This document shows positions 2,403 to 46,506 of a DNA stretch of 64,000 bases, piece by piece. How positions within the stretch are numbered: position 1 is the first letter of the stretch; each line of letters begins with the position of its first letter. The position numbers were made by a program, and so were the translations under genes. The notes under the pieces were generated by a model. That model made no database searches. It had not been told where the DNA came from and was given only the letters and a program-made list of their open reading frames with translations. The stretch is from the sequence record LR756500.1; one strand, given 5' to 3'.

Positions 2403-2551
2403 TGAGAGAGGATGGATTTGAACCACCAAAGACTTTCGTCCGCTGATTTACTGTCAGTTGAGTTTACCAATACTCAGTTTTTCTGTAATAGCTTTAAGTT
2501 CTATTTTCATAGATATTGTAAAAGTTATAAATTGAATTTATTAACTCTCTC
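2403..2551 (-). tRNA. tRNA-Tyr(GUA)-like gene interrupted by ~65-nt element (about 2478-2542) between acceptor and D stem
   Basis: Acceptor halves GAGAGAG / CTCTCTC are 149 nt apart; loop CAGTAAA (A33), variable arm GAC-GAAA-GTC. Confidence 0.75.
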
Positions 2552-2677
2552 ATTATTTCAAATAACTTCGGCTGAGTGTTATGGATATCTTTCAATCCTT
2601 TGTTCCTCATTTAATCTTCTAAGTTGCCATTTAGAACCGTTGTGGAATCTAAGGGGTTCGAATCCCTTTTTTAAACT

Positions 2678-3507
2678 TTATTTTAATGAATTTAAATTTA
2701 TATATGTTTCTAATTTATTTTTATAATAAGAACCATATTTTAATTCCCATTCATTAATTTTTTCTTTTAATTCTTCAATATTAATACTGCATTTAAATCC
2801 TTTTGATATATTATCATTATGTCTTAATAATTTACAATTTGCTGGATGAGCTAATAACAAAGGATTAATTTTTTGTTTATATCCTTCTGATACTGATAGC
2901 ATATGATCTCTACTTATGCCATTCATATTATTTCCCCTATTTTTAGCTTTATACCATCCGTATTTTTTATTAAAGTAAAATCAAATTCTTCATTATAACT
3001 ATTTAAAGAAAATTTAAATAGTGCATTATTATAATATTTTTTATAATTATCTAAATGTTTTCTTTTATATGCTCTTACACATTCATCAGAACAGTATTTT
3101 CTCATTAAAAAGTGCTCTTTTTCACAATAAGGACATTTTTTAATTCTAGGAGTTTTTAAAAATTTATCGTTCCATTTTTTATAAGAACCTTTTGATGCCA
3201 AACCGCTAACAGCTCTAGCACAAAATATACAACAATAATATTTTTCTTTAAATTCTCTTTTATTATTTGATTTAACTTCAAATTCTGTATTACATCTTAA
3301 ATAATTATTACACTTAACAATTTTTGTAATAATATTTTTATCTAATTCTTTTTTTCTTTTCTTTAATGATTTAGAAATTTTTTCTGATTGGTTTTTATAA
3401 TCTTTATTTTTATTAATCATTATATTTCTACATGCATAAGAACAATATTTATTAGTTAATTTATATTTTTCTTTACCACATACAGGACAATTTTTTTCGA
3501 GTTCCAT
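2678..3507 (-). pseudogene. Zn-finger/HNH-type homing endonuclease-like gene split by a 1-nt frameshift in an A-run near 2965
   Basis: ORFs 2923..3507 and 2678..2926 join into ...LIKKYGWYKAKNRGNNMNGISRDH... if one A is added; CxxC motifs. Could be a sequencing error. Confidence 0.55.
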
Positions 3508-3558
3508 AAATATTTTATTTTATATATTAGTGGAGCTATCAGAATTTGAACTTATTAT

Positions 3559-3639
3559 TGGTGGAGGAAATGGGGTTCGAATCCCATGAAACCTCTTGAT
3601 TGCAAATCAAGTACTCTAGCCAGACTGAGCTATACCCCC
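3559..3639 (-). tRNA. tRNA-Ala(UGC)
   Basis: Anticodon arm CTTGA-TTTGCAA-TCAAG, G3:U70, encoded CCA. Confidence 0.9.
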
Positions 3640-3685
3640 CCTAATAAAAATTTAATTCACAGTATTCCAAAGAACATTTTTAAAA

Positions 3686-3717
3686 CAAAAAAAATCCGAT
3701 TTGATTAGAACCGGATT
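3686..3717 (-). terminator. Intrinsic terminator of attenuator 1
   Basis: AAATCCG...CGGATTT stem followed by a T-run on the minus strand. Confidence 0.75.
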
Positions 3718-3750
3718 TAATATTTTAGTTTATATTTATACAAACATATC

Positions 3751-3819
3751 TCATCCGGTAATAGGTGGTGTTCCTAAAGTTTGTGCTTGACCTAATGGAT
3801 ATGTAGATAATGTTTTCAT
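3751..3819 (-). CDS. Leader peptide 1, MKTLSTYPLGQAQTLGTPPITG (22 aa)
   Basis: Manually translated; lies between promoter 3857-3885 and terminator; codons match the downstream tRNA cluster. Confidence 0.75.
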   Translation of the reverse strand: MKTLSTYPLGQAQTLGTPPITG

Positions 3820-3856
3820 TTTTTTATATATAAAACCTTTTTTGTGTAATTTGATT

Positions 3857-3885
3857 ATTATATGCATTTTTTCTAAAATGTTTCG
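3857..3885 (-). promoter_or_regulatory. CGAAAC-N17-TATAAT promoter (also at 25512-25540, 33125-33153, 38561-38589, 46540-46568, 62277-62305; N18 at 46604-46633, 47689-47718, 57014-57043)
   Basis: Same two hexamers with 17-18 nt spacing found by eye in at least nine intergenic regions. Confidence 0.7.
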
Positions 3886-4498
3886 AATAATTATTATTAT
3901 ATGTAAATATAATTAAAAAGAAATTAAAATAAAAATTTTTATAAAAATTAGTTAATTATATTCGATAATTGTTCTTGTTGTTGGTTTAACTTCATGCCAT
4001 ATTTGTTTTGCATTTACCATATCTTGTTTAATCCATGGAGAATCTCCTAATACGGCTTTAAAATATTTACCGCTAGATATTTCTTTAATAACATATTCAT
4101 GTTGAGTTGAATTTTTTGATTGATCGCTATCTATTATTTTTTCGCTTACTATTGTATAAAGTTTAATTTCATTTTTTGTATCATAAATACCTTCCTCATA
4201 CATTATAGATCGTATTTGTTCTTCCGTAAATGTTCTAGTTTCCATATTTAATTAATTTATGTTATACTTAATAGATTATGTAATTCCATTTGTAATTCTC
4301 GTCTACCCATTTGTTTTAAATAATAACCCATTTTTTCATATATTTCAATATCTGATAGATTTTGACCGTCTATAGCAAATCTTTGATTATTAATACCATC
4401 AAATACTACATAATCTTTATCTAATAAATCTTTAAATGAAGTTTTAGCATTAAAATTTAGACCAAGACTTACTCCTAATTTTATTATTTCGTTTGTTT

Positions 4499-5275
4499 TC
4501 ATTCGTACAATATTATTCCTTTATTTGAATCTAATATGGGATGATTTTCATTATCAAAAGCCCAGAAAGGAGCATGACTTAATAATTTACCATTTTCTTC
4601 TCCTGTAAAATTATGATTACAATTATGTAATAATCGTATTCTTTTTTCACTTGCATTTTTACACTGTTGTAAATATACATGAGAAATATATGTACCAACT
4701 ACTTCATCATTTTCTCCAATAATAATACTTAATTCGCCTTTAAAATCTTTATATGTTTCCATTATTTGTTTCATTTCAATATTACCAGATGGAGCACATA
4801 ATAATATTTTTTTAATTTCTTTATATCTATTAGCCATATAAGCAGCTACTGCTCCACCTGCAGAAGTACCAATTAAATAAATATTTGGATCTTTTTCTCC
4901 ACATATTTCAATAGAATTGTTTATACAATATTCAATAACTTCATGAGTTTTTGAAATTATATGAGAAGGATATAAATTTCTATTTAATGTATTATACATA
5001 GATCTCGGAACACTATTATTCATTCTAACAAATGAACCTAATTCTTTTGATACTATATAATCACCTAGTTTAATATATTTATTTTCATAACCTTCAGCAG
5101 TGCCACCGTAGCCTGGAATATTAATTATTATATTCTTTGAATTACATTCATGAATAAATATTTCAGAATTATTTAATTTTATCTGCATTTTCTTTAGAAT
5201 ATAAATATATTTGTTTATGTTCAAACCAAAATTGAGCCCATTGTTCTTTAGCTTCTTTTTTATTAAGTCCTTCAA
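4499..5275 (-). CDS. Alpha/beta hydrolase (true start probably internal)
   Basis: PGYGG oxyanion motif, GTSAGG nucleophile elbow, downstream D and H (GENDEVV, HNCNHNF). Confidence 0.65.
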   Translation of the reverse strand: MKDLIKKKLKNNGLNFGLNINKYIYILKKMQIKLNNSEIFIHECNSKNIIINIPGYGGTAEGYENKYIKLGDYIVSKELGSFVRMNNSVPRSMYNTLNRNLYPSHIISKTHEVIEYCINNSIEICGEKDPNIYLIGTSAGGAVAAYMANRYKEIKKILLCAPSGNIEMKQIMETYKDFKGELSIIIGENDEVVGTYISHVYLQQCKNASEKRIRLLHNCNHNFTGEENGKLLSHAPFWAFDNENHPILDSNKGIILYE

Positions 5276-5826
5276 TTAAAAATTTTTTAAGTCTTTTTTT
5301 CCATTTGCGAGGTTTTATTTTAAAAGTTTTCATTTAATAATAAAATTGCAGAATTATTATAATAGCCATCTCCTGTAAGTTTATAATTTTTATTATTGTA
5401 AGTAAATATTATCCAATAATCCCATTGATATCCATTACTATCAAAATTAATTAATATCTTGTCTAATGTATTAATGTAAGATATAATATCATTAGGTCTA
5501 ACATATAATAATTCTATTGTTTTTACTTTGCCTGATAAAACAGATTGAATATCTTCTTCCATCCATTTTATTACCTGTTTTTCAACATCTTTTTTATTCA
5601 TTATTTATTATTAAATAGTTCAATATCTTCATATCTAAAAGATTGACCACACAATGTACATCTATCTTGATCTATAATTTTAAATGTATTTACATCTCTT
5701 TGCATAAATAATATTCCCTCTTCACATTCTGGGCAAATAGATTTATAAATAGATTCATTACTATATCTTTTTAAATTCATGTATTTAATAATCTTTATAG
5801 GATTATTGATATTTATTGCAATTAAA

Positions 5827-6915
5827 TTATTCATATTTTAAAGATTTAATAAGTTTAGGATTTAATAAAATATATTGTAATAATTTTATTAAATCATCAA
5901 CATCATTTTTATGAACAGTTTCAACTGTAGTGTGCATATATCTCATCGCTAATTTTAATAAAGCAGTCGGTATTCCATGTGGATAAGCATATGAATCTGC
6001 ATTTGTTCCAGATCCTCTACCACTCGCAGTTAATTGATAAGGTATTTTATTTTCCTTTGCTGTATCAATTATTAATTTTAATAAATTCTTTTGAATTGAT
6101 GGAGCATTCATAATAACTAAACCTTTGCCCGCTGATACTGTACCTTGTTTACTTTTATTATATGCTGGGCTTTCAGTATCATGAGTTACATCTATGACTA
6201 TAGCTATATCAGGTTTAATTTTTTCAACAACCATTTGAGCGCCATGTAATCCTACTTCTTCCTGTACAGCATTAACTATAATTAATTCAAAAGGTAATTG
6301 AATTTTATTTTCATATAATTTTTTAATTAATTGTGAATTAACAAATCCTCCTATTTTATCATCTAGAGATCTACCACAATAATAATCTCCTAAATCCATA
6401 TAGCCATCAGACATTGTAATAGGAGTTCCAATTGTTATTCCTAATTTTTCAACATCTTCTTTTTTAGAAACTCCTATGTCTATAAAAATATTTTCTATTT
6501 TTAATTCGAATTTATCTTCTTGAACATGAATAGCAGGGTGACCAAAAACACCTTTAACTTTTCCATTGTCTCCCCATATATCAACTCTGGCTGATGGTGT
6601 AATTGTGATGTCAGAACCACCTAAACGTCCAACTTTTATAAATCCTTCATTTGTAATATCAAATACAAAAAAACCTATTTCATCACAATGAGCATCTAAT
6701 AAAACAGTTTTTATTTCTGATGTTTCTTTTAATGTTTTTAATGCTAAATTAGAAATATAATAAGCATATGCATTACCATAATTATCTATTTCAACTTTGT
6801 CAGCATATTTTTTAACATAATCTATCCATACTTTTTGACCTCCTAATAATAATTCGTATCCACTAGGAGATGGTGTATTAATATATTTTTTAAGAAATTC
6901 TTTTCTGTTTTTCAT
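5827..6915 (-). CDS. M42 family metallo-aminopeptidase (FrvX/YsdC-like)
   Basis: SPSGYE, AHCDEIG, LDDK, VQEEVGL, DVT, HT metal-binding motifs. Confidence 0.85.
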   Translation of the reverse strand: MKNRKEFLKKYINTPSPSGYELLLGGQKVWIDYVKKYADKVEIDNYGNAYAYYISNLALKTLKETSEIKTVLLDAHCDEIGFFVFDITNEGFIKVGRLGGSDITITPSARVDIWGDNGKVKGVFGHPAIHVQEDKFELKIENIFIDIGVSKKEDVEKLGITIGTPITMSDGYMDLGDYYCGRSLDDKIGGFVNSQLIKKLYENKIQLPFELIIVNAVQEEVGLHGAQMVVEKIKPDIAIVIDVTHDTESPAYNKSKQGTVSAGKGLVIMNAPSIQKNLLKLIIDTAKENKIPYQLTASGRGSGTNADSYAYPHGIPTALLKLAMRYMHTTVETVHKNDVDDLIKLLQYILLNPKLIKSLKYE

Positions 6916-7806
6916 ATTTTAATCGTTTAGCTTCATATTGTAATTTTTTAATACAACTATATTCATGCTTTAATATTTTTATTTCATTAAGCATAACTTT
7001 ATCGCAATATGAACATTTATAGGCTTTAACTATTATCATTTTTATATTAAAGCATTTAAAATTGTTAATTTATTATTAATTGTAAAATTTATCATTAAAA
7101 AGGAATTATTTTTAATTTTATTAATATCAATAATTTTTTCTATATAAGTAAAATTTTCATTTAATAAAACTTTTTCATTATTAAAAATATCAATATAACT
7201 AATATTTATATTTTTAATTCCATATATTTTTACTTTTATTTTTTTATTATATAAATTAATAACTTCTAAATATGTTTCTATGTTTATTAATTCATTTTTA
7301 TTTAAATCAATATTAAAAACATATGTTCTATAAATACCATTTTTATCTAATGTATTTAATATGATCTCAGTATTAGTTGTATCATTAAAAACATGAGTTA
7401 CTTTTGAATCATAATAAATAGATGATTCAAGTATCCAACGACAATATTCAAAATCATGATTTAAATTAATTTCAGTTATAATTAATTCATTTTTGTTAAT
7501 TTGATATTTAATAGATATATTTGCTAATAATGTAAAATTTATAACAAATAATAAGAATAGTAGAAAAATATTTTTCATATTAATTTTTTATAAATATAAT
7601 AAAAAAGTTAATAAAAAAAAAATTAAATCCACTTAATTGCTTTTTGAAGAAAATTTGGTTTTTCTTTTATTTTTCTAGCCAATTTTAATTGTTTGTCCAA
7701 TGGGATATTATTAATTATAGAAAGGATTAATTCTTGTATTTCTATAATTTCTTTTTTAGAATTACCATTAATTTCAATTTCAATTTTTTGAATCATAATT
7801 TAAATA

Positions 7807-8412
7807 TTAAATTGATTTAACTTCTTGTTTAAGTTTATTAATTTTATCTTTATTAATAGCTCCTTTTTTATTTATAGCAGGAGTTATATTTCCTTTTTTT
7901 GCTAATAAATCAGCTTGTACTTTAGCTAAATCTTCTTGCTTTTTATAATCTCTTAATTTATTTAATTCACTATTTTTAAGTGCACTTAATTCTTTTCTTA
8001 AAGATTCTTTTCTATTTAAATCTGTCTCATCTCTTAATAGAAATTCAATTTTTTTCTTTCTTTTTCTTATTGTTAAAAGTGTAGCTAATCCTCCAATTAA
8101 GGCTGCACCTGCAATTGCATAAGGTATATTGCTTTTTTTAAATATTACATCTGCTACTTTTCCTGCATCAATACCTTTTTTATGCAATGCTGCAGCTCCT
8201 ACAACTCCTGCTCCTGCTCCTAATGCCCATCCTGCTCCTGAAGCTGCTCCTTTTCCATATTCTTGACTAGTTGTAGTTTCATCAATGCCATCATCAATAT
8301 TTATCACTAAATTATATAATGTTTCATAATCTAAATTATTACATTCCTGATTAATACGTTCTTGTTCATTCCAATATTGTTGCCATTCATTGTAAGTATC
8401 GCAATATTTCAT
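7807..8412 (-). CDS. Gly/Ala-rich putative membrane protein with basic tail
   Basis: GAGWALGAGAGVVGAAAL and AIAGAALIGGLATLL segments. Confidence 0.4.
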   Translation of the reverse strand: MKYCDTYNEWQQYWNEQERINQECNNLDYETLYNLVINIDDGIDETTTSQEYGKGAASGAGWALGAGAGVVGAAALHKKGIDAGKVADVIFKKSNIPYAIAGAALIGGLATLLTIRKRKKKIEFLLRDETDLNRKESLRKELSALKNSELNKLRDYKKQEDLAKVQADLLAKKGNITPAINKKGAINKDKINKLKQEVKSI

Positions 8413-8542
8413 AAGTTTAATTTATTTTTTTATATATTTTAAATCTTATTGCTTAATTTATTTTAATACATTTCACCGGCCCTTTAACTGTAAATTTTAT
8501 ATTGGGTTTATATAATAAAGTTTCGAATGCTTACTGTTATTT

Positions 8543-10980: not shown

Positions 10981-11018
10981 TTGTTTAAAAAATAAAAGGG
11001 GCTTTAAGCCCCTTATTA

Positions 11019-11714: not shown

Positions 11715-11725
11715 TGTTATAATTA

Positions 11726-13533: not shown

Positions 13534-13543
13534 ATTTTAAATT

Positions 13544-23203: not shown

Positions 23204-23214
23204 TAAAAAATTTG

Positions 23215-23291
23215 CGGACTTAATCAGATTCGAACTGACCTGTTTTTCCTGAGTGACAGTCAGGTGGCCACACCAAGCAACCCCTAAGTCC
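23215..23291 (-). tRNA. tRNA-Asp(GUC)
   Basis: Anticodon arm CCTGA-CTGTCAC-TCAGG, G73. Confidence 0.9.
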
Positions 23292-23292
23292 A

Positions 23293-24186
23293 TTATGCTA
23301 TAAATACCTTTTCATTATTTTTAAATACTAATTTTCTTCCTTTAATCCAACCTTTATTTATCCATTCATAAACTTCTTCTTTTTTTACTCTTATAGATTT
23401 CTTCTCTTCTAAATTATGTATCCAACACTTTCCATACTGACTATTTCTTGAACCTAATTGAGATATTTTATTTGCTTTACTTATTTTTTCTCGATGCTCT
23501 TTAGCTAATTTACGTCCTATTTGAATTCCAACTAATTCACCTGATAAATATCTTGGATCATCTACATTTACCCAAAATTTATTTCCGTCTTTATCTTTTA
23601 CACTTGTTTTATGTTTCATTATTCCAACTAATTCACTACTTAAAACTCTAGAATCATTTAAACGACATCTAATAATANNNNNNNNNNNNNNNNNNNNNAA
23701 AGAAAAATATTTACTTTGATATTGATATTCACCTGATTTTAATTTTATATTATTTACATCACATTTAAAAGAATTTCCTTCTTTATCTATAACATTGACT
23801 TTTCCTATACTTATAGGGAAATATTCATTATTATATCTTGAATCACTTTTTAACATTAATGTTTTATTATTTTTTTTATCTTTAACTAATACCAATCCTT
23901 TAGTATTCCAACCATAACCACCTAACATAATATTATAAACATCTTTTCTTTTAACAAACTCTTCATTTACTAACTCAGCCTCTTTAGCAAACATCTCTTC
24001 AAATGTATCAAAATTATAAAGAACTATACGTTCAAAATTGTCTATTCCATACTTCTTAAATGCCTTATGCAAATAAGTACCTGATCCCATATAACCATCT
24101 TCCAACTTATCCGTCTGATGACAGCCTATATAAATTTTATTGTTAATTTTATTAATAATTTCATAAACTATATTATACTTACTCAT
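23293..24186 (-). CDS. GIY-YIG (Seg-like) homing endonuclease; contains a 21-N gap at 23678-23698
   Basis: NIVYEIINKINNKIYIGCH, YMGSG, YNIMLGG, repeated VKDK motifs. Confidence 0.8.
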   Translation of the reverse strand: MSKYNIVYEIINKINNKIYIGCHQTDKLEDGYMGSGTYLHKAFKKYGIDNFERIVLYNFDTFEEMFAKEAELVNEEFVKRKDVYNIMLGGYGWNTKGLVLVKDKKNNKTLMLKSDSRYNNEYFPISIGKVNVIDKEGNSFKCDVNNIKLKSGEYQYQSKYFSXXXXXXXXIIRCRLNDSRVLSSELVGIMKHKTSVKDKDGNKFWVNVDDPRYLSGELVGIQIGRKLAKEHREKISKANKISQLGSRNSQYGKCWIHNLEEKKSIRVKKEEVYEWINKGWIKGRKLVFKNNEKVFIA

Positions 24187-24243
24187 ACCAATGATATATT
24201 TTATTTTATATATCATTAATAGTTCGAGTAAATTATTCGAGGA

Positions 24244-24381
24244 TGGCCGAGAGGGGATTCGAACCCCTGATGTTATCGTGACAAGATAAGACTTTATCCA
24301 TTTATTCTGTAATAACTTTGAGTCCTATTGAGTAGGTAATTTATAAGTTATCTGTGAACTTATTACTAAGCTACTCGGCCA
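24244..24381 (-). tRNA. tRNA-Asp(GUC)-like gene interrupted by ~66-nt element (about 24301-24366) in the D loop
   Basis: GGCCGAG-TA-GCTT-AG|insert|TGGATA-AAGT-C-TTATC-TTGTCAC-GATAA; A73. Confidence 0.8.
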
Positions 24382-24450: not shown

Positions 24451-25149
24451 TTAAATATTATATTCCTTTTTAAATTCTATTTTTTGTTTTCTATTTTGAA
24501 AATCTTTTAATATATTTAAATTTATTAAATCTTCATCTATTAAAATTTTTAATTTACAGGGAAAATTATTCCATTTTGCTAAATCTTTTAATGTAACGTA
24601 TCCTTTAATTTCAATATAAATTTTTTCATCTAATAAAAAGAAATCAGGTCTATATCTTCGAGTTTTTCCTTCATATTCATATTCAAATGTAATATAAGGC
24701 CTTTCCCATTTAATATTATTTTCATCTAAATATTTAGCATAAAGATATTCCCATTTTACTTGTAATTTTATTCCATTATATTCATAATAATTTTTTTTAG
24801 AAAAAGATGTATGCCATTCTCCATTTTTTATTCTTTCATTTATTTTATCAGATATTTTTTGTTTATGTTCTTTTGTTAATTCTGTATTTTTAGAATGATG
24901 TTTAAATAATCCTTCTTTTAAATGTTTCGTTAATGTTTCACCACATCTTTTAACTCTTTCATCAGTATCTTTAGTTAAACCTTTATTCCAAATTATTCTA
25001 CCTTTTTTATATCCGGCATTAGGATCATGATTTCTACCTTCTCCATGCATTTTCCAAATATGTGATCCTATTCCATAAATTGAATATTCTTTATTACATA
25101 TTAAACATTTACATTTTCCGTTATCTAATTTTACATATTGTTTATCCAT
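24451..25149 (-). CDS. Homing endonuclease (zinc finger, WNKGLT repeat, PD-(D/E)xK C-terminus)
   Basis: CxxC-H, WNKGLTK, YRPDF...YIEIKG. Confidence 0.65.
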   Translation of the reverse strand: MDKQYVKLDNGKCKCLICNKEYSIYGIGSHIWKMHGEGRNHDPNAGYKKGRIIWNKGLTKDTDERVKRCGETLTKHLKEGLFKHHSKNTELTKEHKQKISDKINERIKNGEWHTSFSKKNYYEYNGIKLQVKWEYLYAKYLDENNIKWERPYITFEYEYEGKTRRYRPDFFLLDEKIYIEIKGYVTLKDLAKWNNFPCKLKILIDEDLINLNILKDFQNRKQKIEFKKEYNI

Positions 25150-25285: not shown

Positions 25286-25369
25286 ATATTTATTTTCAAT
25301 GAACTAATATGTAAATATAATAAAAAAGTAATTAATAAAAAAATCCAGCATGTCAAAGAACCATTTAAA

Positions 25370-31792: not shown

Positions 31793-31985
31793 TTTTATTT
31801 CTTAAACTTATCATAACAGAATTACCAAAGGAAGTAAGTTTATTTGTCCAACCTAACTCAATAAATCCAATAGTTTCTAAATCCTTTAAATAATTTATAT
31901 CAGGCGAAGTAAGATATTCATTACCAGTTCCTATTGATTTTAAAGTATTATATAATATTTTTTTTCCATTCAATAAAAAGTTTAG

Positions 31986-32057
31986 TTGCGGGGGCAGGAT
32001 TCGAACCTGCGACACACGGCTTATGAGGCCGTTGAGCTACCACTGCTCTACCCAGCA
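31986..32057 (-). tRNA. tRNA-Met(CAU), initiator-like D arm
   Basis: GAGCAGTGGTAGCTC D arm, ACGGC-CTCATAA-GCCGT; lacks the full GGG/CCC initiator stem. Confidence 0.75.
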
Positions 32058-32065
32058 ATTTAAAT

Positions 32066-32141
32066 TGGTTGGTCCGGTAGAAATTGCATCTACGGCCCAT
32101 AAATTAAAAGTTTATTGCTCTACTATCTGAGCTACGGACCA
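32066..32141 (-). tRNA. tRNA-Lys(UUU)
   Basis: ATAAA-CTTTTAA-TTTAT, encoded CCA; atypical T loop TGCAATT and D loop without GG. Confidence 0.85.
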
Positions 32142-32921: not shown

Positions 32922-32980
32922 CATATTTTCAAAGAACATTATTTAAACTAATATGTAAATATAATAAATTAGTTTAAAAT

Positions 32981-33013
32981 AAAAAAACCCAATTCAAAAA
33001 ATGAATTGGGTTT
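32981..33013 (-). terminator. Intrinsic terminator of attenuator 4
   Basis: AAACCCAATTCA-TTTTT-TGAATTGGGTTT then T-run. Confidence 0.8.
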
Positions 33014-37664: not shown

Positions 37665-37934
37665 ATGATCAAATGTTTTAAAAATAAATATTATAAGTAG
37701 GCCCTAACCCTACATAATCGTCCTGACTTCCACAGTATAGAACATCTCGAAGTAAATCTTTCATTAGTAATCATATTTATCGTATGTGCCCCTATTACTA
37801 AATGATTAACGTTGAATGTTAATTACAGTTGCTTAATCCATCATAATATCCAGTTATAAATTTGGCAAAATTTTATACTGTTTGAGATTTTTTTATTATA
37901 TTGCCATAATGAAAATCAATAAAAACATTAACAG

Positions 37935-38017
37935 AGGAAGGAGTGGGATTCGAACCCACGGTACCGTAGTACGTCAGTTTTCAGGACTGAATTCATAAAC
38001 CTCTCGAACACCCTTCC
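37935..38017 (-). tRNA. tRNA-Ser(UGA)
   Basis: TCAGT-CCTGAAA-ACTGA, long variable arm GTAC-TACG-GTAC. Confidence 0.88.
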
Positions 38018-38286: not shown

Positions 38287-38291
38287 AATTT

Positions 38292-39205: not shown

Positions 39206-39778
39206 TTAATCAGTTGATCCAATATCACGTATTTTCTTTATAAATTTTGGAGCAGAATTTAAAGATACTTTAAATGTTTCTCCTGTATACTGTAATAGAA
39301 ATTCAACATATGAATCTGTTTTATCAATTATTAATGCCCAGGAATTACTATTAATTTTTAGATTACAATCTCGACCTACATCTAAATTTGATGTAATATA
39401 TTCTCTATCTTGATCTGGAACAATATCTTCAAATCGTTTTATTATTTTATATGCATTATTTTTTAATACATTAAATATTCTAATATTATATGTAGAATGT
39501 AACATAAAAAATACATAAGTTGAATCTGTCTCATCTATTATTAATATTTCTACGCCACTCCTTAATATACAACATTTTCCAACATCTATATTCTTTTTAA
39601 TAAATTCTTCATCTAATTCTCTTTGCTTAATAGCAGATAATGTTTCATCATTATTAACCATTTCAGATTCTTTAGAAGACTCAGAATAAGTTTCATTATC
39701 ATTAGTTATAACAGGTTCTTTTTTAGAACTACATGATAAAAATAAAATCGAAATTAAAATTAATGTTAAATATTTCAT
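39206..39778 (-). CDS. Putative lipoprotein
   Basis: MKYLTLILISILFLSC lipobox. Confidence 0.55.
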   Translation of the reverse strand: MKYLTLILISILFLSCSSKKEPVITNDNETYSESSKESEMVNNDETLSAIKQRELDEEFIKKNIDVGKCCILRSGVEILIIDETDSTYVFFMLHSTYNIRIFNVLKNNAYKIIKRFEDIVPDQDREYITSNLDVGRDCNLKINSNSWALIIDKTDSYVEFLLQYTGETFKVSLNSAPKFIKKIRDIGSTD

Positions 39779-40836
39779 AATTACAATTTTTAAAAAGATA
39801 GCAAAGAATCGGTAACTACCCGATAAAGTTGTTAAAGTTTAACCTGATTTATAACAGTATAAAGTTATTAGTTATTTATTCTTCAGTATCTTTTAGATTT
39901 TTAAATATTTTATTTGCTTCTTTCGAATTAATTACTGCTAATAATAATTTATTAGTTTGTAGTGCTAATTTAAAAACAGAATTTGATGCTTTATATTTAT
40001 ATAAAATATAAGATTCATATGAATTTAAAAATTGTTCTACGTTACCATCAAATATTTTAGCTATATGTTCTTGTGTAGGAGCTTCTAGTTTGGTTAAACG
40101 TTTACAATATAATTTATATTCATATTGTGCATCAGTTAATATTGATATTAAAACATTATTAAATCCTAATTTTTTAGCAACTGATTTAAGATGAGCAACT
40201 AACATTCCAGTCTTTTGATTACTATTTAATTTTTGATATATCTTATATTTATTTTCTTTCATTGGAAAACCATACAATAAAAGACTAAAATTAAACGATA
40301 AATCTCTAATTAAATTAGCATTGCCTATTTTTTGAAAATCTTTACTCATCTGGTAATTTATTATAATATATTAGTATTATTGTATACCATAAATAACCAG
40401 GTATAAATGATAATTTAAATTCTTTTTTAGTTACTACTTGTTTATTATAATGCTTATATGCATAAAATGAATACAGTTCTAAATAATAAATAAGCAATGC
40501 AAAAAATAAAATAATCGTTAATACTACTAAAAATATTTCCATGATTAATCGGGTATTTTATTATAACTACTTAGTATTGAATTATACCACCAATAAAAAG
40601 GTATTAAAGACATTTTAGCTTCTTTTTTATTTTTAAATCCATTTATTAGTTCATATTCTCCCCAGTATTTATCATATTCTTGAAAAAATCTTATTACATA
40701 AAGAATATAATAAATGATTAAAACAAATGTAATTAATATTAATACAACACATAATTAATAATTTTAATAAATTTAATAATAAAGTTTATAATTAAAAAAT
40801 AAAGGTGCAAATATTTTATAAATGCACCTTTATTAA

Positions 40837-41874
40837 TTAGATTGTAAATTCTTTAGCTTTATGCCATTTAGAATTTTTTACCCATCCATTGTTAGCAATA
40901 AGTGAAAAATAAATTATAGCTTTATCTTCAGATATTATTTGACCTAAAAATTGAGTATTCTTAACATGAATTCTTACATTATTATTAGTAGTTTCATCTA
41001 CTTCTGAAACAAATTCTTCATCAATAAGATCTCTAACAATTTCAGCAACTTTATCTTTTTGAGATAATTCAGTTTTAGTTAATTCTTTTTCTAATTGATC
41101 AAAAGTTGTTATACCGGTAATTGATAATTTAGTTCTAATTTTTTCAACAGATGCATTATCTACTTTTCCAGTTTGTTGATTTTCAATAGCTAAAGATCCA
41201 TAACAACCTCTAATAAGTTGAGACCAGATAGATTTCCAATAATCATAATTAGGAGCTCTTTCTATTCCTACTACAGTTCCATTAATAAGAATTATAGCAC
41301 CTACTTGTTTAGGAACTGTTTCAAATTCTGCAGCAAATTCCTCTAATTCTTTTTCAAATTTTTTAAAGAAAAATTCTAAATGACCTCGATTTTCATATCC
41401 ATTTTGTACAGATTTAGTTCTTGTATTAAATTCTATAATGGCTGGCCACATTTTATTATAGGATCTTTCCTTTCTTACTGCATGCGATTTTTCACGTAAT
41501 GAAAATGGCATAATAACAAACTCATGATTATCCATAGGAATATGGCCCGCTTGTGTTTGTTGAACACATGCTGCAGTATCATATGTTTTAGTCATTTTTT
41601 TACAAATTATTCCTGCATGCATCATTCCATGATCTTGAGCTGCATGTTTTGTCATATATGTAGCATTAGATGGAATAATCATTTTTTTATCACTATCATT
41701 TTGAAAATTCATAGAACCATAACTATTAGTTCCAAATTTTCCAGCTTGTTTAGGAGATACATAATCATTAAACTCTATATCTGATAATAGAGGAATAACT
41801 TGCATAGCTCCAACTGTTTGTAAATTTCCCGTGACAGTTCCCTTAAGAAGTTCTCTTACTGTTAATTTTGACAT
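40837..41874 (-). CDS. Hypothetical protein, ARPP-1/DUF6569-like (tentative)
   Basis: General resemblance from memory (GAMQVIPLL, QVGAIILING); paired with the vWA gene. Confidence 0.35.
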   Translation of the reverse strand: MSKLTVRELLKGTVTGNLQTVGAMQVIPLLSDIEFNDYVSPKQAGKFGTNSYGSMNFQNDSDKKMIIPSNATYMTKHAAQDHGMMHAGIICKKMTKTYDTAACVQQTQAGHIPMDNHEFVIMPFSLREKSHAVRKERSYNKMWPAIIEFNTRTKSVQNGYENRGHLEFFFKKFEKELEEFAAEFETVPKQVGAIILINGTVVGIERAPNYDYWKSIWSQLIRGCYGSLAIENQQTGKVDNASVEKIRTKLSITGITTFDQLEKELTKTELSQKDKVAEIVRDLIDEEFVSEVDETTNNNVRIHVKNTQFLGQIISEDKAIIYFSLIANNGWVKNSKWHKAKEFTI

Positions 41875-41882
41875 AATTTTTC

Positions 41883-43448
41883 TTATTTTTTAGTAGGTTT
41901 AAGTTTAGGAAGTGTTAAGTTAAATAGTCCAATAATGCCATCTTGTAAATTAGATTCTAACATTGCTTTAATCATTCCTAGTCCTAATGAACTAGGTTTA
42001 TTAGCAGGTATTACTGATAATTTATCACTTAATCTTTTAATTCCAGATGATTCAGCGCTCATTACTGGAGTTACTTGATATACTGGTATATTACATCCCA
42101 TATTTCTTACTGCATGCAATACTTCGTTTACTCTACCAGCTGGAGCATTTTCATATCCATCAGATATAATAAATATTGCATTAGGTTCTTCTTTAAATAA
42201 TTGAACAAGCGGTTTTGCTAAATTTGTTTCTCCTAATGGATAGATAAGATCATTTTTATCTAAACCTCCGGCATAAACTACTTTACTTTTCTTAGCTGTT
42301 GCTTGTAGCATATCTCTTATTGCTAATGTTATTGCAATAGGTCTTAATTCTTGGGTTGAATCACCTCTTGAAGAATTTGATCCATCAACAAGTATTCCAA
42401 TATTTTCATAAGATAAAGGAGCCTTTTTAGCAGCATCTTCAGCTTTAGCTTTTAATGCTATTTTTACTTCAGGACTCATTCCTGTTTTATATGCATGAAT
42501 ATAAAGGTCAACCACCTCTTGTTTTGAAGGATCCCAAGCAATACTTATTCCAGCCTGCTTAGCTCTTGTTTGAACCTTCATTTTTTCTTTTTCAGTAAAA
42601 TTATCTTTAGCAACTTCTATAACTTTTTCTTTAGTTACATTTTTATGATAAATACTTCTTATACCTTCAAGTACTTCTGGGGGTAATTTTTTACCTTTTG
42701 TAATATTGGTTTTAGCTTCATTATAAGATTTAAGTGTTTCTATATTTAAATCTTTTTCATTTCCTAAAATAAAACTTAAGCATTCATATACGTATTCATT
42801 AGTATTTGAAACAATATATTTATGAACATTTTTAATCATAATAGTTTGCTCTTTAGCATCCCATGTATTTGATTTTCTTTTAAGAATAGAAGCAATAATA
42901 CTTGATGTTCTTTTTCCCCAGGCATGCTCTAATGCTGAACGAAGTTTTCTTCTATATTTAATTGACCAATAATCTAAACTTTTAGAATTAATTATTGTTC
43001 TTAAAATAATATTTCTTGTTCTAGAATTATTAATTCTTTTTTCTTTAATTTCTTCATAAAGTTTTAGCATCCTTTGAGGAGGAAGTTGATTTAACAAATA
43101 AATAACAATATTTGTTTCAATATCTAATGGAAGCATTGACGATTCTCTATTATCTTTTTCTGATAATAATTTTTCAACACCTACCATTTTAGAATAATCT
43201 GTTAATCCATCTAAAAGTAATGTAGCACCATATAAACCTCTATTTATAGTAAATAAATTTCGGTGAATTGCATTAACTGCATCTCTTTGTTCATCCTTTG
43301 TGTTATAAGCAGTTGCTCGATCTGTTGATGTATTTGCTACATCAATAAAACTAAGAAACGTTTTTATAACAACATCTTCATTTAAACCAGAGAAGTTTTG
43401 CAGATTAATATCTGTACCTGCAACTTGAATTGATCTAGTTTCTGTCAT
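41883..43448 (-). CDS. Helical N-terminus plus C-terminal vWA domain (TROVE/Ro-like architecture, tentative)
   Basis: ILVDGSNS, GETNL, FIISDGYEN. Confidence 0.45.
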   Translation of the reverse strand: MTETRSIQVAGTDINLQNFSGLNEDVVIKTFLSFIDVANTSTDRATAYNTKDEQRDAVNAIHRNLFTINRGLYGATLLLDGLTDYSKMVGVEKLLSEKDNRESSMLPLDIETNIVIYLLNQLPPQRMLKLYEEIKEKRINNSRTRNIILRTIINSKSLDYWSIKYRRKLRSALEHAWGKRTSSIIASILKRKSNTWDAKEQTIMIKNVHKYIVSNTNEYVYECLSFILGNEKDLNIETLKSYNEAKTNITKGKKLPPEVLEGIRSIYHKNVTKEKVIEVAKDNFTEKEKMKVQTRAKQAGISIAWDPSKQEVVDLYIHAYKTGMSPEVKIALKAKAEDAAKKAPLSYENIGILVDGSNSSRGDSTQELRPIAITLAIRDMLQATAKKSKVVYAGGLDKNDLIYPLGETNLAKPLVQLFKEEPNAIFIISDGYENAPAGRVNEVLHAVRNMGCNIPVYQVTPVMSAESSGIKRLSDKLSVIPANKPSSLGLGMIKAMLESNLQDGIIGLFNLTLPKLKPTKK

Positions 43449-44362
43449 AATATAAAATTTATTTGTTTAATTGATTTATTTGTAAATATAATAATTTTGT
43501 AATTAAATAGGTATTTAATTATCATTTAATTTATAAATAGTTATTATAACCATTTATAAATTCTATTACTCATTTGTTCTAAAATGTGTTTTCTATCTTT
43601 ATCTAAAATTTCAATTTCATTTAATATTTCAGTTAAACTATTTTGAAGAATAATTTTAACATTAGCTTGTTCAAATTTATGTTGTGTTTTACTAAAAATA
43701 TTAAACTCACCTGTTAATAAATCTTTAACAACTATTTGATATTCATTTACTGCTATAATTTCAAAATAGTTTAATCCATTTGTAGTTATTTTATTTTCAA
43801 TTTCAAACATAAATTTATTTAGATATTATATCGAATTCATCTCCAAGTTTATTAATTGTATTTGCTAATATTTTAACTAATGATTTTATCCATTCATTAG
43901 ATTGTCGTTCTAAAATTTCATCTTGTTCTTTATCGGTTAAATCTTCAAAAACAACATTTTCCCATTTACTTGTTTCTATATTTTTACTTCTAAAAAAGCA
44001 ACCTGATAATTTTCTTTGTGTTTTAGGCATTTTTATTTTTTGAAATTTTTATTATAACTTTTTCATTTAAATCATTTACATGTTCTAAACTTTTTATATT
44101 TAATTTTTTTAAATCTTCAATGTTTTTTATTCCTATTAATTCATTATAAGCATTAATTTGATCTTCTGATAATGAATTAACAAAATCGATTGATTTTGTT
44201 ATATGTAATGAAAAATTATAATCTTCTTCTGTTAATATATTTTCACCACATAATGGACATGTTTTATTAATCCAATTAATATAGTCTTCATGTTTAATTG
44301 TTTCATCTTTCCAATCACAATTAGGATTATCACATTGTAATCCTTCATTTATTACTTCTATA

Positions 44363-44845
44363 TTATTTTTCATTTTTTCTTTTCCATTTTTTAAAAGGAT
44401 TTCTAGCTAATTCCGCATTATAGTATTTTTTAGTATAACTAACTTCTTTTTCAATCCAAATAGGTTTTTCAAATTCTTCATTTTCAGATGTTAATTCAAT
44501 TTCAGCCATAATTAATCCCTCATTATCATCTTCGAAAAAATCAATTTCCCATTTCTTATCTTTATACATTAAAACAGATCTTGTTTTTTTAATTTTATTT
44601 TTACAAAATTTTTCGTATAGTTCAGAACCTTGTTTAAAAGGAATTTCATATTCAATTTCTTCTCGAGATATTCCTTTTACTTTACTTTTAATTGTCATTA
44701 ATCCAAGACTGCTATCTATTAATCTAACTCTAATAGAACACTCTGAATTTTTAGATAAATAACCTTGTTTTATTTTATATGATATATCAAAAGATACATT
44801 ATTAATAAGATCTTTGTTAACTAAAAATTTTCTTTCTATTTCCAT
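44363..44845 (-). CDS. CYTH domain protein
   Basis: MEIERKFLV, QGYL, RVR, TIK, EIEYEI, KTR, WEID, AEIEL. Confidence 0.88.
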   Translation of the reverse strand: MEIERKFLVNKDLINNVSFDISYKIKQGYLSKNSECSIRVRLIDSSLGLMTIKSKVKGISREEIEYEIPFKQGSELYEKFCKNKIKKTRSVLMYKDKKWEIDFFEDDNEGLIMAEIELTSENEEFEKPIWIEKEVSYTKKYYNAELARNPFKKWKRKNEK

Positions 44846-44919
44846 ACGTGTGTTTAAACAATTAAACCGAACTCACATAGAATTTGGTTTAATAATGGAG
44901 ATAATTCAACAATTATTTT

Positions 44920-44995
44920 TGGTTGAATGTATCGGATTTGAACCGAAGACCCTCTGCTTTTAAGGCGGATGCTCTACCAACTGAGCTAATATTCT
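44920..44995 (-). tRNA. tRNA-like gene with UAA anticodon in a class I (Lys-like) body, flanked by the permuted element
   Basis: TCCGC-CTTAAAA-GCAGA, 5-nt variable loop, two acceptor mismatches, encoded CCA. Confidence 0.65.
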
Positions 44996-45078
44996 GTAAT
45001 AATTATTAGTTCTCCATTATTTTTTATTAATTAAAATATTTATATGCAATATTAATAATAATGTTTAAATAATAAAAA

Positions 45079-45885
45079 TTACCAATATTTATAAATATCT
45101 CCATCAATTCCATCAACATGTATTTTTAGATTATATGCTTCTTCTAAAGACATTATTATTTTTTGCATATCTGCATCATAAAATCCTGCACAAGCAATAC
45201 TTCCACATTCTACAATTTTCCACCTATATTCACTAAGACATATATCTATAGTAAATGCTTTAGCCAATTGAAATATTTTAATCATTTGTTTAACATATTC
45301 AATTGCATCATTATCAACTATATCATCATAAGCAATATATGTTCCTCTTCTATAAGTACTTTGTGTAACTATTTTTCCATCTATTATCCAAAATCTTATT
45401 TCTTGAGTAATATTTTTAACAGTTGCTACTTGTAATAAAGTTTCATTTGTTATAGTCGTTTTAGGTAGTAAATTATTTTTAAAATTTGTCCATTCTTCAT
45501 ATGTAAATACTCTTCCAGTAAATACTTTACTATCTAATGTTGGTCTAATAAAATGTTTATCAGAAATCCATTCAAAATCATTTCCAAATTTAACTATTCT
45601 AGAATCATAATTAAGTAAATTTTCTTTATAATGTTTAGAATAAACATCATAATCATGATTTTTAGTTATTAGAGTGCCTGGAAACCAATTATATTGTTTT
45701 GATAATCTAGCTAGTTTTAAAGATCCAAATATAAAAACATCTTCACGATCAGTATTAAAATCTAATGTTTCTTTATCATTACTAACATTTATTAATTCAT
45801 AAGATATATTAAATCTATCTAATGTTTTAATAAGTTTATCATAACCTTCTTCTCTAAATAAATTTTTTTGTATAATATAATACAT
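45079..45885 (-). CDS. ATP-grasp domain protein (DUF4343-like)
   Basis: FIRP...KVFTG, EIRFWIIDG, FTIDI, KIVEC, AGFY. Confidence 0.65.
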   Translation of the reverse strand: MYYIIQKNLFREEGYDKLIKTLDRFNISYELINVSNDKETLDFNTDREDVFIFGSLKLARLSKQYNWFPGTLITKNHDYDVYSKHYKENLLNYDSRIVKFGNDFEWISDKHFIRPTLDSKVFTGRVFTYEEWTNFKNNLLPKTTITNETLLQVATVKNITQEIRFWIIDGKIVTQSTYRRGTYIAYDDIVDNDAIEYVKQMIKIFQLAKAFTIDICLSEYRWKIVECGSIACAGFYDADMQKIIMSLEEAYNLKIHVDGIDGDIYKYW

Positions 45886-45973
45886 TTATAGTTAAATATT
45901 ATTTTTTGAATTTTATATATCTAAATAATATAAAAAAACCTATATAAATAAATTATATAGGTTTTTTTGGGGC

Positions 45974-46114
45974 TGGAGGGAGTAGGAATTGAACCTACAA
46001 TATCAAAACCCTAAATTTTGCGTGTTTACCGTTTTTCTGTAATGACTTTGAGTTCACCTTTAAAAGATGGTATTGTAAAAGACATAATTGAATTTTTATT
46101 TTCACCATCCCTCC
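45974..46114 (-). tRNA. tRNA(UAG), Leu-like with short variable loop, interrupted by ~69-nt element (about 46032-46100) in the D loop
   Basis: GGAGGGA-TG-GTG-AA|insert|CGGTAAA-CAC-G-CAAAA-TTTAGGG-TTTTG. Confidence 0.8.
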
Positions 46115-46369
46115 ATGTAATGTTTGTAAAAATTGAGTTAATTAATAAGATAAGTTTTTGTATATTTTTTATAACGCTTACAAGCTTTAAGTAATTTAAA
46201 TAGTTACTACTATGTTGTTTTGAACCTTATCAAAACTTCTAACAAACAATGTTTATTAGACTCGCTTTTTATTTGATAAATTATTATCAATTTTTCTGAA
46301 CTATCTTAGAGTTCTCAATTTTAATCATAATGTTAAAGAACGTATTTTACTTTTTAAAGTAAATGTATT

Positions 46370-46506
46370 TGGCGGGGGAATTCGGGATCGAACCGAAACT
46401 GAATGTTTTCAACACATTTGCTCTACCAATTAAGCTTTTATACTGTAATAACTTAGAGTTTCTTTTCAGACTAATTTTAAAGTTATAGATGTAAATCTAT
46501 TCCCCC
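46370..46506 (-). tRNA. tRNA(UGA) in a class I body, interrupted by ~62-nt element (about 46436-46497) after position 9
   Basis: GGGGGAA-TA|insert|GCTT-AATTGGTA-GAGC-A-AATGT-GTTGAAA-ACATT; G73 plus CCA. Confidence 0.78.

What the first reader, a model, noticed from the sequence alone, without database searches (positions are those of the whole stretch)
2403..46506. Every element-bearing tRNA duplicates an anticodon already present in an intact gene and has identity defects
Pairs: Tyr GUA (674 vs 2403), Asp GUC (23215 vs 24244), Leu UAA (2204 vs 44920), Leu UAG (55161 vs 45974), Ser UGA (37935 vs 46370). The element copies have A33, A73 in Asp, or lack the long variable arm typical of bacterial Leu/Ser tRNAs. 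Inference: they may be non-translating anticodon decoys for host anticodon nucleases, mischarged tRNAs, or relaxed duplicates.
Basis: inference. Interest (0 to 1): 0.7.

Follow-up and report, generated by a model that had tools for sequence, protein, structure and literature searches.

The report
Hairpin-interrupted spare tRNAs in a phage
A 429-kb groundwater phage carries four extra tRNA genes split by a conserved 61-70-base hairpin module and a fifth flanked by half-modules; these are conserved, well-folded members of a family shared with related phages, not decaying copies.

Summary
All five loci are real and sit at the stated places. Their anticodons (GUA, GUC, UAA, UAG, UGA) repeat those of uninterrupted genes. 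A33 (Tyr), A73 (Asp) and the missing long variable arm (Leu, Leu, Ser) are all present.

The duplication itself says little. The uninterrupted genes already form a complete minimal decoding set of 24 anticodons, so almost any extra sense tRNA must be a duplicate.

The "element" is a structured module: helix P1 with strong covariation, an inner hairpin P2, an ACU motif and an invariant UACAG. It lies between nt 9|10 or inside the D-loop. I found about 15 interrupted homologues in at least 7 other AT-rich phage contigs. All keep 7/7 acceptor pairing across the insert, with compensated sequences and intact T and anticodon arms. Removing the module in silico restores canonical cloverleaves.

They are therefore selected tRNAs, not relaxed pseudogenes. 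Anticodons vary among homologues, although class-I Ser-UGA, Leu-UAA and Leu-UAG recur. Nothing specifically supports nuclease decoys.

No RNA data exist, so I could not determine how the module is handled. My best guess is that it is an intervening sequence removed or cut from the precursor. No description of it turned up in the literature searches.

The parts
2403..2551 (-). Interrupted tRNA-Tyr(GUA). 5' exon 2543-2551; element E 2477-2542 (66 nt, between nt 9|10); 3' exon 2403-2476. Class II, A33, A73.
   Evidence: With E removed, ARAGORN calls an 84-nt tRNA-Tyr. CM R1 scores 61.5 bits.
24244..24380 (-). Interrupted tRNA-Asp(GUC). 5' exon 24365-24380; E 24300-24364 (65 nt, in the D-loop before G18); 3' exon 24244-24299. 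A73.
   Evidence: R1 scores 67.9 bits.
45974..46114 (-). Interrupted class-I tRNA with Leu anticodon UAG. 5' exon 46101-46114; E about 46031-46100 (70 nt, in the D-loop; the boundary within an A run is ambiguous); 3' exon 45974-46030. A73, G37.
   Evidence: R1 scores 72.3 bits.
46370..46506 (-). Interrupted class-I tRNA with Ser anticodon UGA. 5' exon 46498-46506; E 46437-46497 (61 nt, between nt 9|10); 3' exon 46373-46436 plus encoded CCA 46370-46372. G73.
   Evidence: Rfam tRNA matches only model positions 6-65 at 46379-46439. The E-less homologue L052:6392-6465 fixes the insertion site.
44891..45021 (-). Contiguous class-I tRNA with Leu anticodon UAA (44920-44995, CCA encoded). It is preceded by the 3' third of E (about 44996-45015, ending UUAC|AG, where AG begins the acceptor). 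About 21 bp of long-range pairing encloses the tRNA (45011-45021 with 44891-44901, plus an inner helix).
   Evidence: MFE fold z = -3.99. The same layout is seen in L090:1931-2006 and L187:1242-1315.
673..753 (-). Uninterrupted class-II tRNA-Tyr(GUA), partner of 2403.
23214..23291 (-). Uninterrupted but atypical tRNA-Asp(GUC), G73, 78 nt; partner of 24244.
   Evidence: (36.7 bits)
2203..2286 (-). Uninterrupted class-II tRNA-Leu(UAA).
55160..55242 (-). Uninterrupted class-II tRNA-Leu(UAG).
37934..38017 (-). Uninterrupted class-II tRNA-Ser(UGA).
23293..24216 (-). GIY-YIG homing-endonuclease ORF lying exactly between the two Asp genes. Contains the N gap 23678-23698.
   Evidence: phrog_314, E 6e-37
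24451..25149 (-). Endonuclease ORF (PD-(D/E)XK-like) directly upstream of the interrupted Asp gene.
52322..53278 (-). Pnkp-like polynucleotide kinase/3'-phosphatase ORF within the tRNA cluster (an RNA-end-healing enzyme).

Best explanation
The five loci belong to a second, non-canonical tRNA set that this huge phage carries beside a complete canonical set.

Four genes are interrupted by a conserved structured module, E (61-70 nt). Its layout is: an A/U-rich linker, an 8-bp helix P1, an internal loop, hairpin P2, an ACU motif, the P1 return strand, an invariant UACAG, and an A-rich tail. E lies between nt 9|10 or within the D-loop. The fifth gene has E sequence as its 5' leader and acceptor start.

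These genes are kept under selection as tRNAs. The overlap with canonical anticodons is a consequence of the canonical set being complete. The 'identity defects' are traits of the family's class-I chassis, which related phages also carry without the module.

Most likely mechanism (inferred, not shown):
1. The precursor is cut by RNase P at the distal G1.
2. E acts as an RNA-level intervening sequence, recognised through P1 plus UACAG.
3. E is cut out of, or cut within, the precursor. This yields either a religated tRNA or a two-piece tRNA held together by the G/C-rich acceptor stem.
4. The Tyr, Asp and probably Leu products then decode as spare tRNAs. The fate of the class-I Ser-UGA product is open.
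For: Shown:
1. Real split genes. In all four window copies a 7/7 acceptor complement lies 57-71 nt upstream of ACAG, in a 24% GC genome.
2. E is a structured element. On 19 distinct copies, P1 is 90% paired and 6 of 8 pairs carry double (compensatory) changes. No shuffle out of 500 reached the observed values, and slid controls were 35-46% paired. P2 covaries by inspection (CUA/UAG, CCUA/UAGG, UCUC/GAGA, CUUCC/GGAAG).
3. The family is conserved. CM R1 and pattern scans found interrupted copies in IMG/VR and metagenome contigs L053/L055 (two copies), L060, L090 (two), L098 (three), L142, L059 and L051. Every one has perfect acceptor pairing with a different sequence.
4. The Ser-UGA lineage (window, L060, L098c, and E-less L052) keeps acceptor, anticodon and T stems fully paired while their sequences differ.
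5. Removing E gives canonical tRNAs.
6. The leader before G1 (..AAAU|G) matches that of the intact genes.
7. Position 37 follows the decoding rule: G37 with UAG and UGG, A37 with UAA, UGA, GUA, GUC, UCU, UGC and UAU.
8. The canonical set is complete.
9. In the second phage, G001, the interrupted Tyr and Met genes also duplicate canonical ones.
10. Uninterrupted class-I tRNAs with Leu or Ser anticodons occur in L043, L044, L045, L052 and L090.
11. E occurs only in tRNA contexts in the 429-kb genome.
Against: - No RNA data. All runs holding this DNA are groundwater DNA runs, and the read laying was uninformative. Excision, religation and charging are therefore all inferred.
- E's ends lie in single-stranded linkers rather than a defined junction helix. 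That would also fit an insert retained as an extra arm.
- No known ribozyme or intron family matches.
- No EndA, Rnl1 or Rnl2 family hit in the genome (the two ligase searches had no positive control). A crude motif scan found no ligase.
- Insertion sites differ (9|10, 17|18, after 20), and half-modules flank contiguous tRNAs. This is also what a DNA-level mobile or recombination module would give.
- A class-I Ser-UGA tRNA should not be a SerRS substrate, and the phage encodes no SerRS or LeuRS.
Confidence: 0.5

Rival explanations
1. Anticodon decoys. These RNAs are not translated with. They present host-like anticodon loops to soak up or misdirect host anticodon nucleases, or they are nuclease-resistant variants.
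For: - A Pnkp-like end-healing enzyme sits in the cluster. This fits an arms race over tRNA cleavage.
- Tyr has A33, and a relative's Asn(GUU) has the loop CAGUUAA, also with A33. Both are GUN anticodons, the class targeted by colicin-E5-type nucleases.
- The published hypothesis that phage tRNAs evade anticodon nucleases through anticodon-loop changes (PMC10264068; PMC11555353).
Against: - Homologues carry at least 14 anticodons, with no focus on known targets.
- A decoy needs only an anticodon arm, yet the acceptor, T arm, leader, position 37 and, in two copies, an encoded CCA are all conserved.
- The host and its tRNAs are unknown, so no loop comparison is possible.
- The idea does not explain E.
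Confidence: 0.12
2. Relaxed duplicates: tRNA genes knocked out by insertion of a small mobile DNA element and now drifting.
For: - ARAGORN does not call the four interrupted genes, and Rfam detects only part of the Ser copy (46379-46439, model positions 6-65).
- Homing-endonuclease ORFs crowd the cluster.
- Insertion sites vary.
- Target-duplication-like repeats of the first 9-11 tRNA bases flank the insert in L168 and in a Saccharibacteria MAG, L261.
Against: - The E copies are only about 60% identical, so they are old. Yet 15 of 15 interrupted genes keep perfect, compensated acceptor helices and intact arms.
- There are no terminal duplications around the window copies.
- The G-U pairs in P1 work only on the transcribed strand.
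Confidence: 0.1
3. E is mainly a DNA-level module. It would be a recombination or cassette boundary, comparable to the promoter-stem-loop cassettes of T4-type phages, that shuffles tRNA genes. At the RNA level it would be merely tolerated, either as an extra arm protruding from the D-loop/elbow or as a flanking processing stem.
For: - Contiguous tRNAs are flanked by a 3' half-E upstream and a 5' half-E downstream. This is a circular permutation of 'E then tRNA', as expected from unequal exchange in E-tRNA arrays.
- Relatives have highly plastic arrays with 3-5 copies of one anticodon.
- E is joined to the tRNA by flexible A/U linkers.
- The same D-arm-plus-E combination occurs on otherwise different tRNAs: the window's Leu-UAG copy and L098's Pro-UGG copy.
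Against: - The invariant UACAG and ACU, and the strand-specific covariation, point to recognition at the RNA level.
- An insert between nt 9 and 10 would sit in the tRNA core.
- No recombinase is tied to E.
- Promoter-like and terminator-like sites are not enriched (19 against 18.2 expected; 0 terminators).
Confidence: 0.18
4. Mischarging, or uncharged signalling. The class-I Ser and Leu anticodon tRNAs would be charged with another amino acid. Alternatively they would stay uncharged on purpose, for example to switch on host T-box or stringent responses.
For: - Class-I Ser-UGA recurs in at least 4 phage contigs, with G73 or A73 and no long arm.
- CCA is encoded in the Ser-UGA and Leu-UAA copies.
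- Four of the five window loci belong to the class-II isotypes (Tyr, Leu, Leu, Ser), against 5 of 24 canonical anticodons (my count; hypergeometric p about 0.002). Across all relatives the enrichment is weak (9 of 25).
Against: - No identity set of another synthetase is visible. There is no G3:U70, even in the relative with an Ala anticodon.
- The idea is wholly untested.
- It does not explain E, nor the Tyr, Asp and Met members.
Confidence: 0.07

Closest known systems
Non-canonical (BHB-type) tRNA introns of archaea and some eukaryotes
   Same: They are short intervening sequences at non-anticodon positions, including the D-arm. The gene is unrecognisable to standard finders until the insert is removed. 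Exon pairing is maintained across the insert.
   Different: The context here is bacterial: tmRNA is present and Tyr is class II. No EndA gene is in the phage (with a valid control). By inspection there is no bulge-helix-bulge at the junctions. E has its own conserved sequence and structure (P1, ACU, UACAG), whereas archaeal introns share only the BHB.
Group I introns in bacterial and phage tRNA or protein genes
   Same: They are intervening sequences in bacteria and phages, often associated with homing endonucleases. E ends in G.
   Different: E is 61-70 nt, far too small for a group I core. It is not in the anticodon loop. There is no Rfam intron hit, even at E <= 1.
Ribosomal RNA intervening sequences and two-piece tmRNA (excision without religation)
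   Same: A hairpin-forming insert sits in a structural RNA whose function survives because the flanking helices hold the pieces together. This is the model for a possible two-piece tRNA.
   Different: Such inserts have never been described for tRNA. The E helices (about 8 + 4 bp) are shorter than typical RNase III substrates. Excision is not shown here.
Theta (HDV-like) ribozymes next to gut-phage tRNAs (PMC10879173)
   Same: They are small structured RNAs embedded in phage tRNA clusters and proposed to control tRNA maturation. This phage also carries a CUA suppressor-type tRNA.
   Different: Theta ribozymes flank tRNAs and have an HDV-like double pseudoknot. E has two A/U-rich helices, lies inside the tRNA, and matches no HDV-like model.
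Phage tRNAs proposed to evade anticodon nucleases (PMC10264068, PMC11555353)
   Same: These are redundant phage copies of tRNAs that carry anticodon-loop peculiarities (A33). RNA-repair genes lie nearby.
   Different: Those tRNAs are contiguous and chargeable. The case here rests on one loop change, and the host is unknown.

Membership tests
Bacterial-type tRNA (Rfam RF00005) | Cloverleaf with a 7-bp acceptor stem, D, anticodon and T arms, and a GTTCRANYC-type T-loop. | tested here: met
   Met after removing E: ARAGORN calls Tyr(gta), Asp(gtc), Leu(tag) and Ser(tga). With E in place, Rfam sees only model positions 6-65 of the Ser copy.
Bacterial tRNA-Ser / tRNA-Leu (class II) | A long, paired variable arm. 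| tested here: not met
   Variable loops are 4-5 nt at 46373, 45974 and 44920. The uninterrupted partners do have the arm.
Archaeal/eukaryal BHB tRNA intron | A splicing endonuclease (EndA) is available. | tested here: not met
   TIGR00324 is absent from the 429-kb genome, and the control rang in 4 archaea. The host is unknown, but tmRNA and a class-II Tyr point to a bacterium.
Archaeal/eukaryal BHB tRNA intron | A bulge-helix-bulge formed by the two exon-intron junctions. | tested here: inconclusive
   Inspected by eye only, at the Ser_w and Asp_w junctions. There is no 3-4-3 motif, and the junctions lie in A/U linkers. No dedicated BHB scan was run.
Group I intron | A P1-P9 catalytic core (at least about 200 nt) matching Rfam Intron_gpI. 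| tested here: not met
   E is 61-70 nt. No hit at gathering threshold or at E <= 1.
Known small self-cleaving ribozymes (hammerhead, twister, twister-sister, pistol, hatchet, HDV-like) | A match to the family covariance model. | tested here: not met
   No hit at E <= 1 anywhere in the window. Self-cleavage itself cannot be tested with these tools.
MITE / IS-derived insertion | Terminal inverted repeats at the very ends, plus a target-site duplication. | tested here: not met
   P1 is subterminal and there are no flanking direct repeats at the four window copies. Duplicated 5' tRNA ends are seen only in L168 and L261.
Nuclease-evading phage tRNA (van den Berg et al. 2023) | Anticodon-loop substitutions, relative to the host tRNA, at a nuclease's cleavage site. 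| not testable with these tools
   The host and its nucleases are unknown. Only A33 in Tyr_w is unusual.

The most novel reading that the evidence does not exclude
E is a previously undescribed class of bacterial-virus tRNA intervening sequence. It would be a roughly 60-nt hairpin module, recognised through P1 plus UACAG, that is excised from the D-arm region of the precursor either by self-cleavage or by a phage or host nuclease. The product would be a religated tRNA or a natural two-piece tRNA. Maturation of a parallel class-I tRNA set, including orphan Ser-UGA tRNAs, would then be gated during infection.
Probability: 0.3. Interest if true: 0.85.

Novelty: new variant of a known kind. Interest (0 to 1): 0.62.

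Why it matters
Outside group I introns in anticodon loops, bacterial and phage tRNA genes are taken to be uninterrupted. Standard finders therefore miss these genes, and huge-phage tRNA counts are underestimates.

A conserved, structured insert in the D-arm region has been maintained across diverged phages, with compensatory evolution of the split acceptor stem. That implies either an unknown processing route or an unexpectedly tolerant tRNA architecture.

The accompanying class-I tRNAs with Ser and Leu anticodons raise a directly testable question: how, or whether, they are charged.

For the finding as posed, the useful result is negative. Redundancy with the canonical set is expected, and it is not evidence for decoys.

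Tried and rejected
- **IMG/VR scan for the exact 3' motif**. All 38 outside hits were chance matches in coding DNA.
- **BLAST against phage records.** It found only the near-identical, unannotated LR756500.1.
- **Public runs.** Only groundwater DNA runs hold the region, with no RNA. Laying contigs gave no allele lacking E. It showed only other organisms' tRNAs matching the body of the 44920 gene.
- **GTDB representative genomes.** There were 100 pattern hits but no convincing E copy (best 24.7 bits). Two CPR MAG tRNAs have ..UUACAG.. leaders, one with a duplicated 5' end.
- **Promoter reading of E.** Sigma-70-like sites are at the shuffled expectation, and there are no terminators. The tail after ACAG is not conserved as a -10 box.
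- **An alternative helix between the 5' exon (GUAAUAA) and UUAUUAC.** Relatives do not support it, whereas P1 is supported.
- **Integron attC-like and IS200/IS605-like readings** (TTAC target). The AAC/GTT or guide features are not conserved, and no transposase or recombinase is linked to E.
- **Codon supply.** Four of the five duplicated anticodons serve abundant codons (UUA 65, GAU 60, UAU 46, UCN 45 per 1000). However, CUN is rare (15), and the most used codons (AAA, AAU, GAA, AUU/AUA) have no extra copy. The result is not decisive.
- **RNA ligase hunt**. Nothing was found, but the family searches lacked positive controls.

Full report
**Context.** The window is part of a 429-kb virus record (CheckV estimates it 96% complete). 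It is identical to the unannotated GenBank record LR756500.1, 'uncultured phage', 462 kb. The DNA is found only in groundwater metagenome runs. GC content is about 24%, and nearly all ORFs and all RNA genes lie on the - strand. All of the genome's tRNA genes lie within about 58 kb, and all but one inside this window. They comprise 26 tRNAs and a tmRNA called by ARAGORN, plus a Cys gene seen only by Rfam. A tmRNA and class-II Tyr tRNAs point to a bacterial host.

**Gap.** The N run at 23678-23698 lies inside a GIY-YIG homing-endonuclease ORF (23293-24216). The frame as written stays open across it, and endonuclease-family matches lie on both sides. The gap length is only an estimate, so continuity and frame are not established. 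I did not look the letters up elsewhere. Neither Asp gene is within 380 nt of the gap.

**Observation.** All five loci are as described.
- In four of them, a G/C-rich 7-mer lies 57-71 nt upstream of a conserved ..AUUACAG. This 7-mer is the perfect complement of the 3' acceptor strand that follows a normal T arm.
- Among about 110 unrelated pattern hits in metagenomes, only true copies of the element showed such a complement at that distance.
- The loops read CAGUAAA (Tyr, A33), UUGUCAC (Asp; discriminator A73), UUUAGGG (Leu UAG) and GUUGAAA (Ser UGA).
- The Leu and Ser copies have variable loops of 4-5 nt.
- Locus 44920 is a contiguous class-I tRNA (Rfam 51.5 bits). Only the last third of the element lies in front of it.

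The uninterrupted partners exist. However, the uninterrupted genes already supply 24 anticodons covering all 20 amino acids plus CUA. This is a Mollicutes-like minimal set with U34 in the four-codon boxes. Any additional sense tRNA would therefore duplicate one of them, so the headline regularity carries little information.

**What the element is.** I call the element E. Alignment of the four copies with homologues shows this layout:
- an A/U-rich linker (..AAAUUYA..);
- helix P1 (consensus AUAACUUU / AAAGUUAU);
- a 7-nt loop strand ending in UA;
- hairpin P2 (3-6 bp);
- (G)AACUN;
- the P1 return strand;
- an invariant U(A/U)CAG;
- an A-rich tail of 5-9 nt.

P1 has strong covariation. On 19 distinct sequences, 90% of cells are paired, and 6 of 8 pairs show changes on both sides (AU, GC, GU, UA, UG at single positions). 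No shuffle out of 500 reached the observed values, and partners slid by 1-3 columns reached only 35-46%. The independent MAFFT alignment gave the same picture. P2 covaries by inspection.

A covariance model, R1, finds exactly the four copies in the 429-kb genome, and the exact 3' motif occurs nowhere else in it. Rfam finds no intron or ribozyme there, even at E <= 1.

**Relatives.** Pattern scans plus R1 recovered interrupted tRNAs in two ~200-kb IMG/VR phages (L053/L055 = G001/G002, two copies each). They also recovered them in contigs L060, L090 (two), L098 (three), L142, L059 and L051. L090 and L142 share the tmRNA-Lys synteny of this window.

- **Insertion sites.** E lies between U17 and G18 of the D-loop in most copies, including Asp and Leu-UAG here. 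It lies after G19-20 in one copy. It lies between nt 9 and 10 in Ser and Tyr here and in L053a. An E-less class-I Ser-UGA gene (L052:6392-6465) has an almost identical D-arm and T-loop, and this fixes the Ser insertion at 9|10.
- **Conservation.** Every one of the 15 interrupted genes has 7/7 acceptor pairing, and each has a different sequence. In the Ser-UGA lineage (window, L060, L098c, L052), the acceptor, anticodon and T stems all stay paired while their sequences differ.
- **Fold and context.** Deleting E in silico gives canonical cloverleaves. The leaders before G1 resemble those of the intact genes. Position 37 tracks the anticodon as decoding rules predict. The exceptions are two of the three CAU copies, which have U37.

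These are selected, tRNA-shaped RNAs, not decaying duplicates.

**Other contexts of E.** E, or its 3' half, also lies directly before contiguous class-I tRNAs whose acceptor begins at the AG of ACAG. Examples are 44920 here, L090 Leu-UAG, L187 Phe, L051, L059, L084 and L168. In these cases a 5' half-E lies downstream, so the two halves enclose the tRNA in a long-range stem. E also precedes a bare T-arm minihelix in G002.

This permuted layout, the plastic and highly redundant arrays of relatives, and the many homing-endonuclease ORFs all suggest that E also takes part in DNA-level shuffling.

**Function.** No RNA data exist.

I favour an RNA-level intervening sequence that is cut out or cut, for three reasons:
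- UACAG and ACU are conserved, and P1 covaries in a strand-specific way.
- An insert at 9|10 would sit in the tRNA core.
- The exons reconstitute perfect tRNAs.

Points against this view:
- The junctions lie in flexible linkers.
- There is no EndA (valid control).
- No RNA ligase was found (weak tests).
- No known ribozyme matches.

A Pnkp-like end-healing enzyme is present in the cluster.

- Relaxed duplicates are contradicted by the evidence above.
- Decoys have no specific support. Homologues carry at least 14 anticodons, and everything a working tRNA needs is conserved. A33 occurs in the Tyr copy and in one Asn relative, both with GUN anticodons. That detail is compatible with the published nuclease-evasion idea.
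- The Leu copies have A73. From what is known of E. coli LeuRS (my recollection), they may be chargeable without the long arm.
- The class-I Ser-UGA tRNA is conserved in at least four contigs and remains an orphan. The phage has no SerRS or LeuRS.
- Codon usage neither explains nor excludes a supply role.

**Novelty.** Literature searches for interrupted or D-arm-intron phage tRNAs found nothing comparable. The closest analogues are archaeal non-canonical introns, rRNA intervening sequences and two-piece tmRNA, and the theta ribozymes of gut-phage tRNA clusters. I rate the element as a new variant of a known kind (disrupted tRNA genes). The specific claim of the finding is true but largely explained.

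Noticed in passing
window 32922-32990, 25286-25350, 56822-56860, about 46590-46640; also downstream of 16771 and 48652: A repeated motif, TTATTATATTTACATATTAG, is followed after about 10 nt by GTTCTTTGAAAATA. It lies upstream of tmRNA, Asn and His and at other intergenic sites. It is probably a phage-specific promoter or regulatory repeat.
   Followed up: no
window 56632-56716 and 56738-56821: ARAGORN draws the uninterrupted tRNA-Glu(UUC) (85 nt) and tRNA-His(GUG) (84 nt) with long, paired variable arms. This is abnormal for these isotypes. Related contigs also have 84-88-nt Glu, Gln, Gly and Cys genes.
   Followed up: partly
window 48652-48720 and 48730-48790: An amber-suppressor-type tRNA (anticodon CUA, 69 nt) is present. 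Just upstream lies another T-arm-like GGTTCGAGTCC, possibly a degenerate tRNA. I did not test the genome for TAG recoding.
   Followed up: no
window 52244-52314 and 52322-53278: tRNA-Cys(GCA) is detected only by Rfam. It lies next to a Pnkp-like polynucleotide kinase/3'-phosphatase ORF. No RNA ligase partner was found.
   Followed up: partly
window 23214-24380: A GIY-YIG homing-endonuclease gene fills the whole space between the interrupted and the uninterrupted Asp genes. Its stop codon abuts one gene, and its start lies 28 nt from the other. This looks like a homing insertion next to its target. Further endonuclease ORFs lie at 24451-25149 and 54280-55098, and there is an HNH-like ORF (motif seen by eye, no PHROG hit) at 2923-3507.
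   Followed up: partly
window 2555-2700: Just upstream of the interrupted Tyr gene lies another E-like hairpin (ATAAC..GTTAT, about 2560-2585). There is also an inverted fragment resembling the 3' end of the intact Tyr gene (about 2640-2690).
   Followed up: no
L043:14026-14150; L045:6340-6430; L187:1330-1405: Related phages hold other odd tRNA forms. One is a tRNA with a ~50-nt insert in the anticodon loop. Another is a class-I UAA tRNA body without a nearby 5' acceptor strand. A third is an E module followed only by a T-arm/acceptor minihelix ending in CCA.
   Followed up: no
L261:4300-4440 (Saccharibacteria MAG); L227:1535-1643 (Daviesbacteria MAG); L168:1594-1745: Bacterial (CPR) and unassigned contigs have complete tRNAs preceded by ..UUACAG(A/U)AUA.. 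leaders. In L261 and L168, the first 9-11 tRNA bases are repeated 45-70 nt upstream. This may hint at the host lineage, or at how E moves.
   Followed up: partly
window 31985-32141 and 237-309, 2110-2183: Several uninterrupted tRNAs have non-consensus T-loops: Lys UGCAAUU, Gly UUUAAUU, Pro GUCGUGG. Deviations from canonical tRNA features are therefore not confined to the interrupted genes.
   Followed up: no
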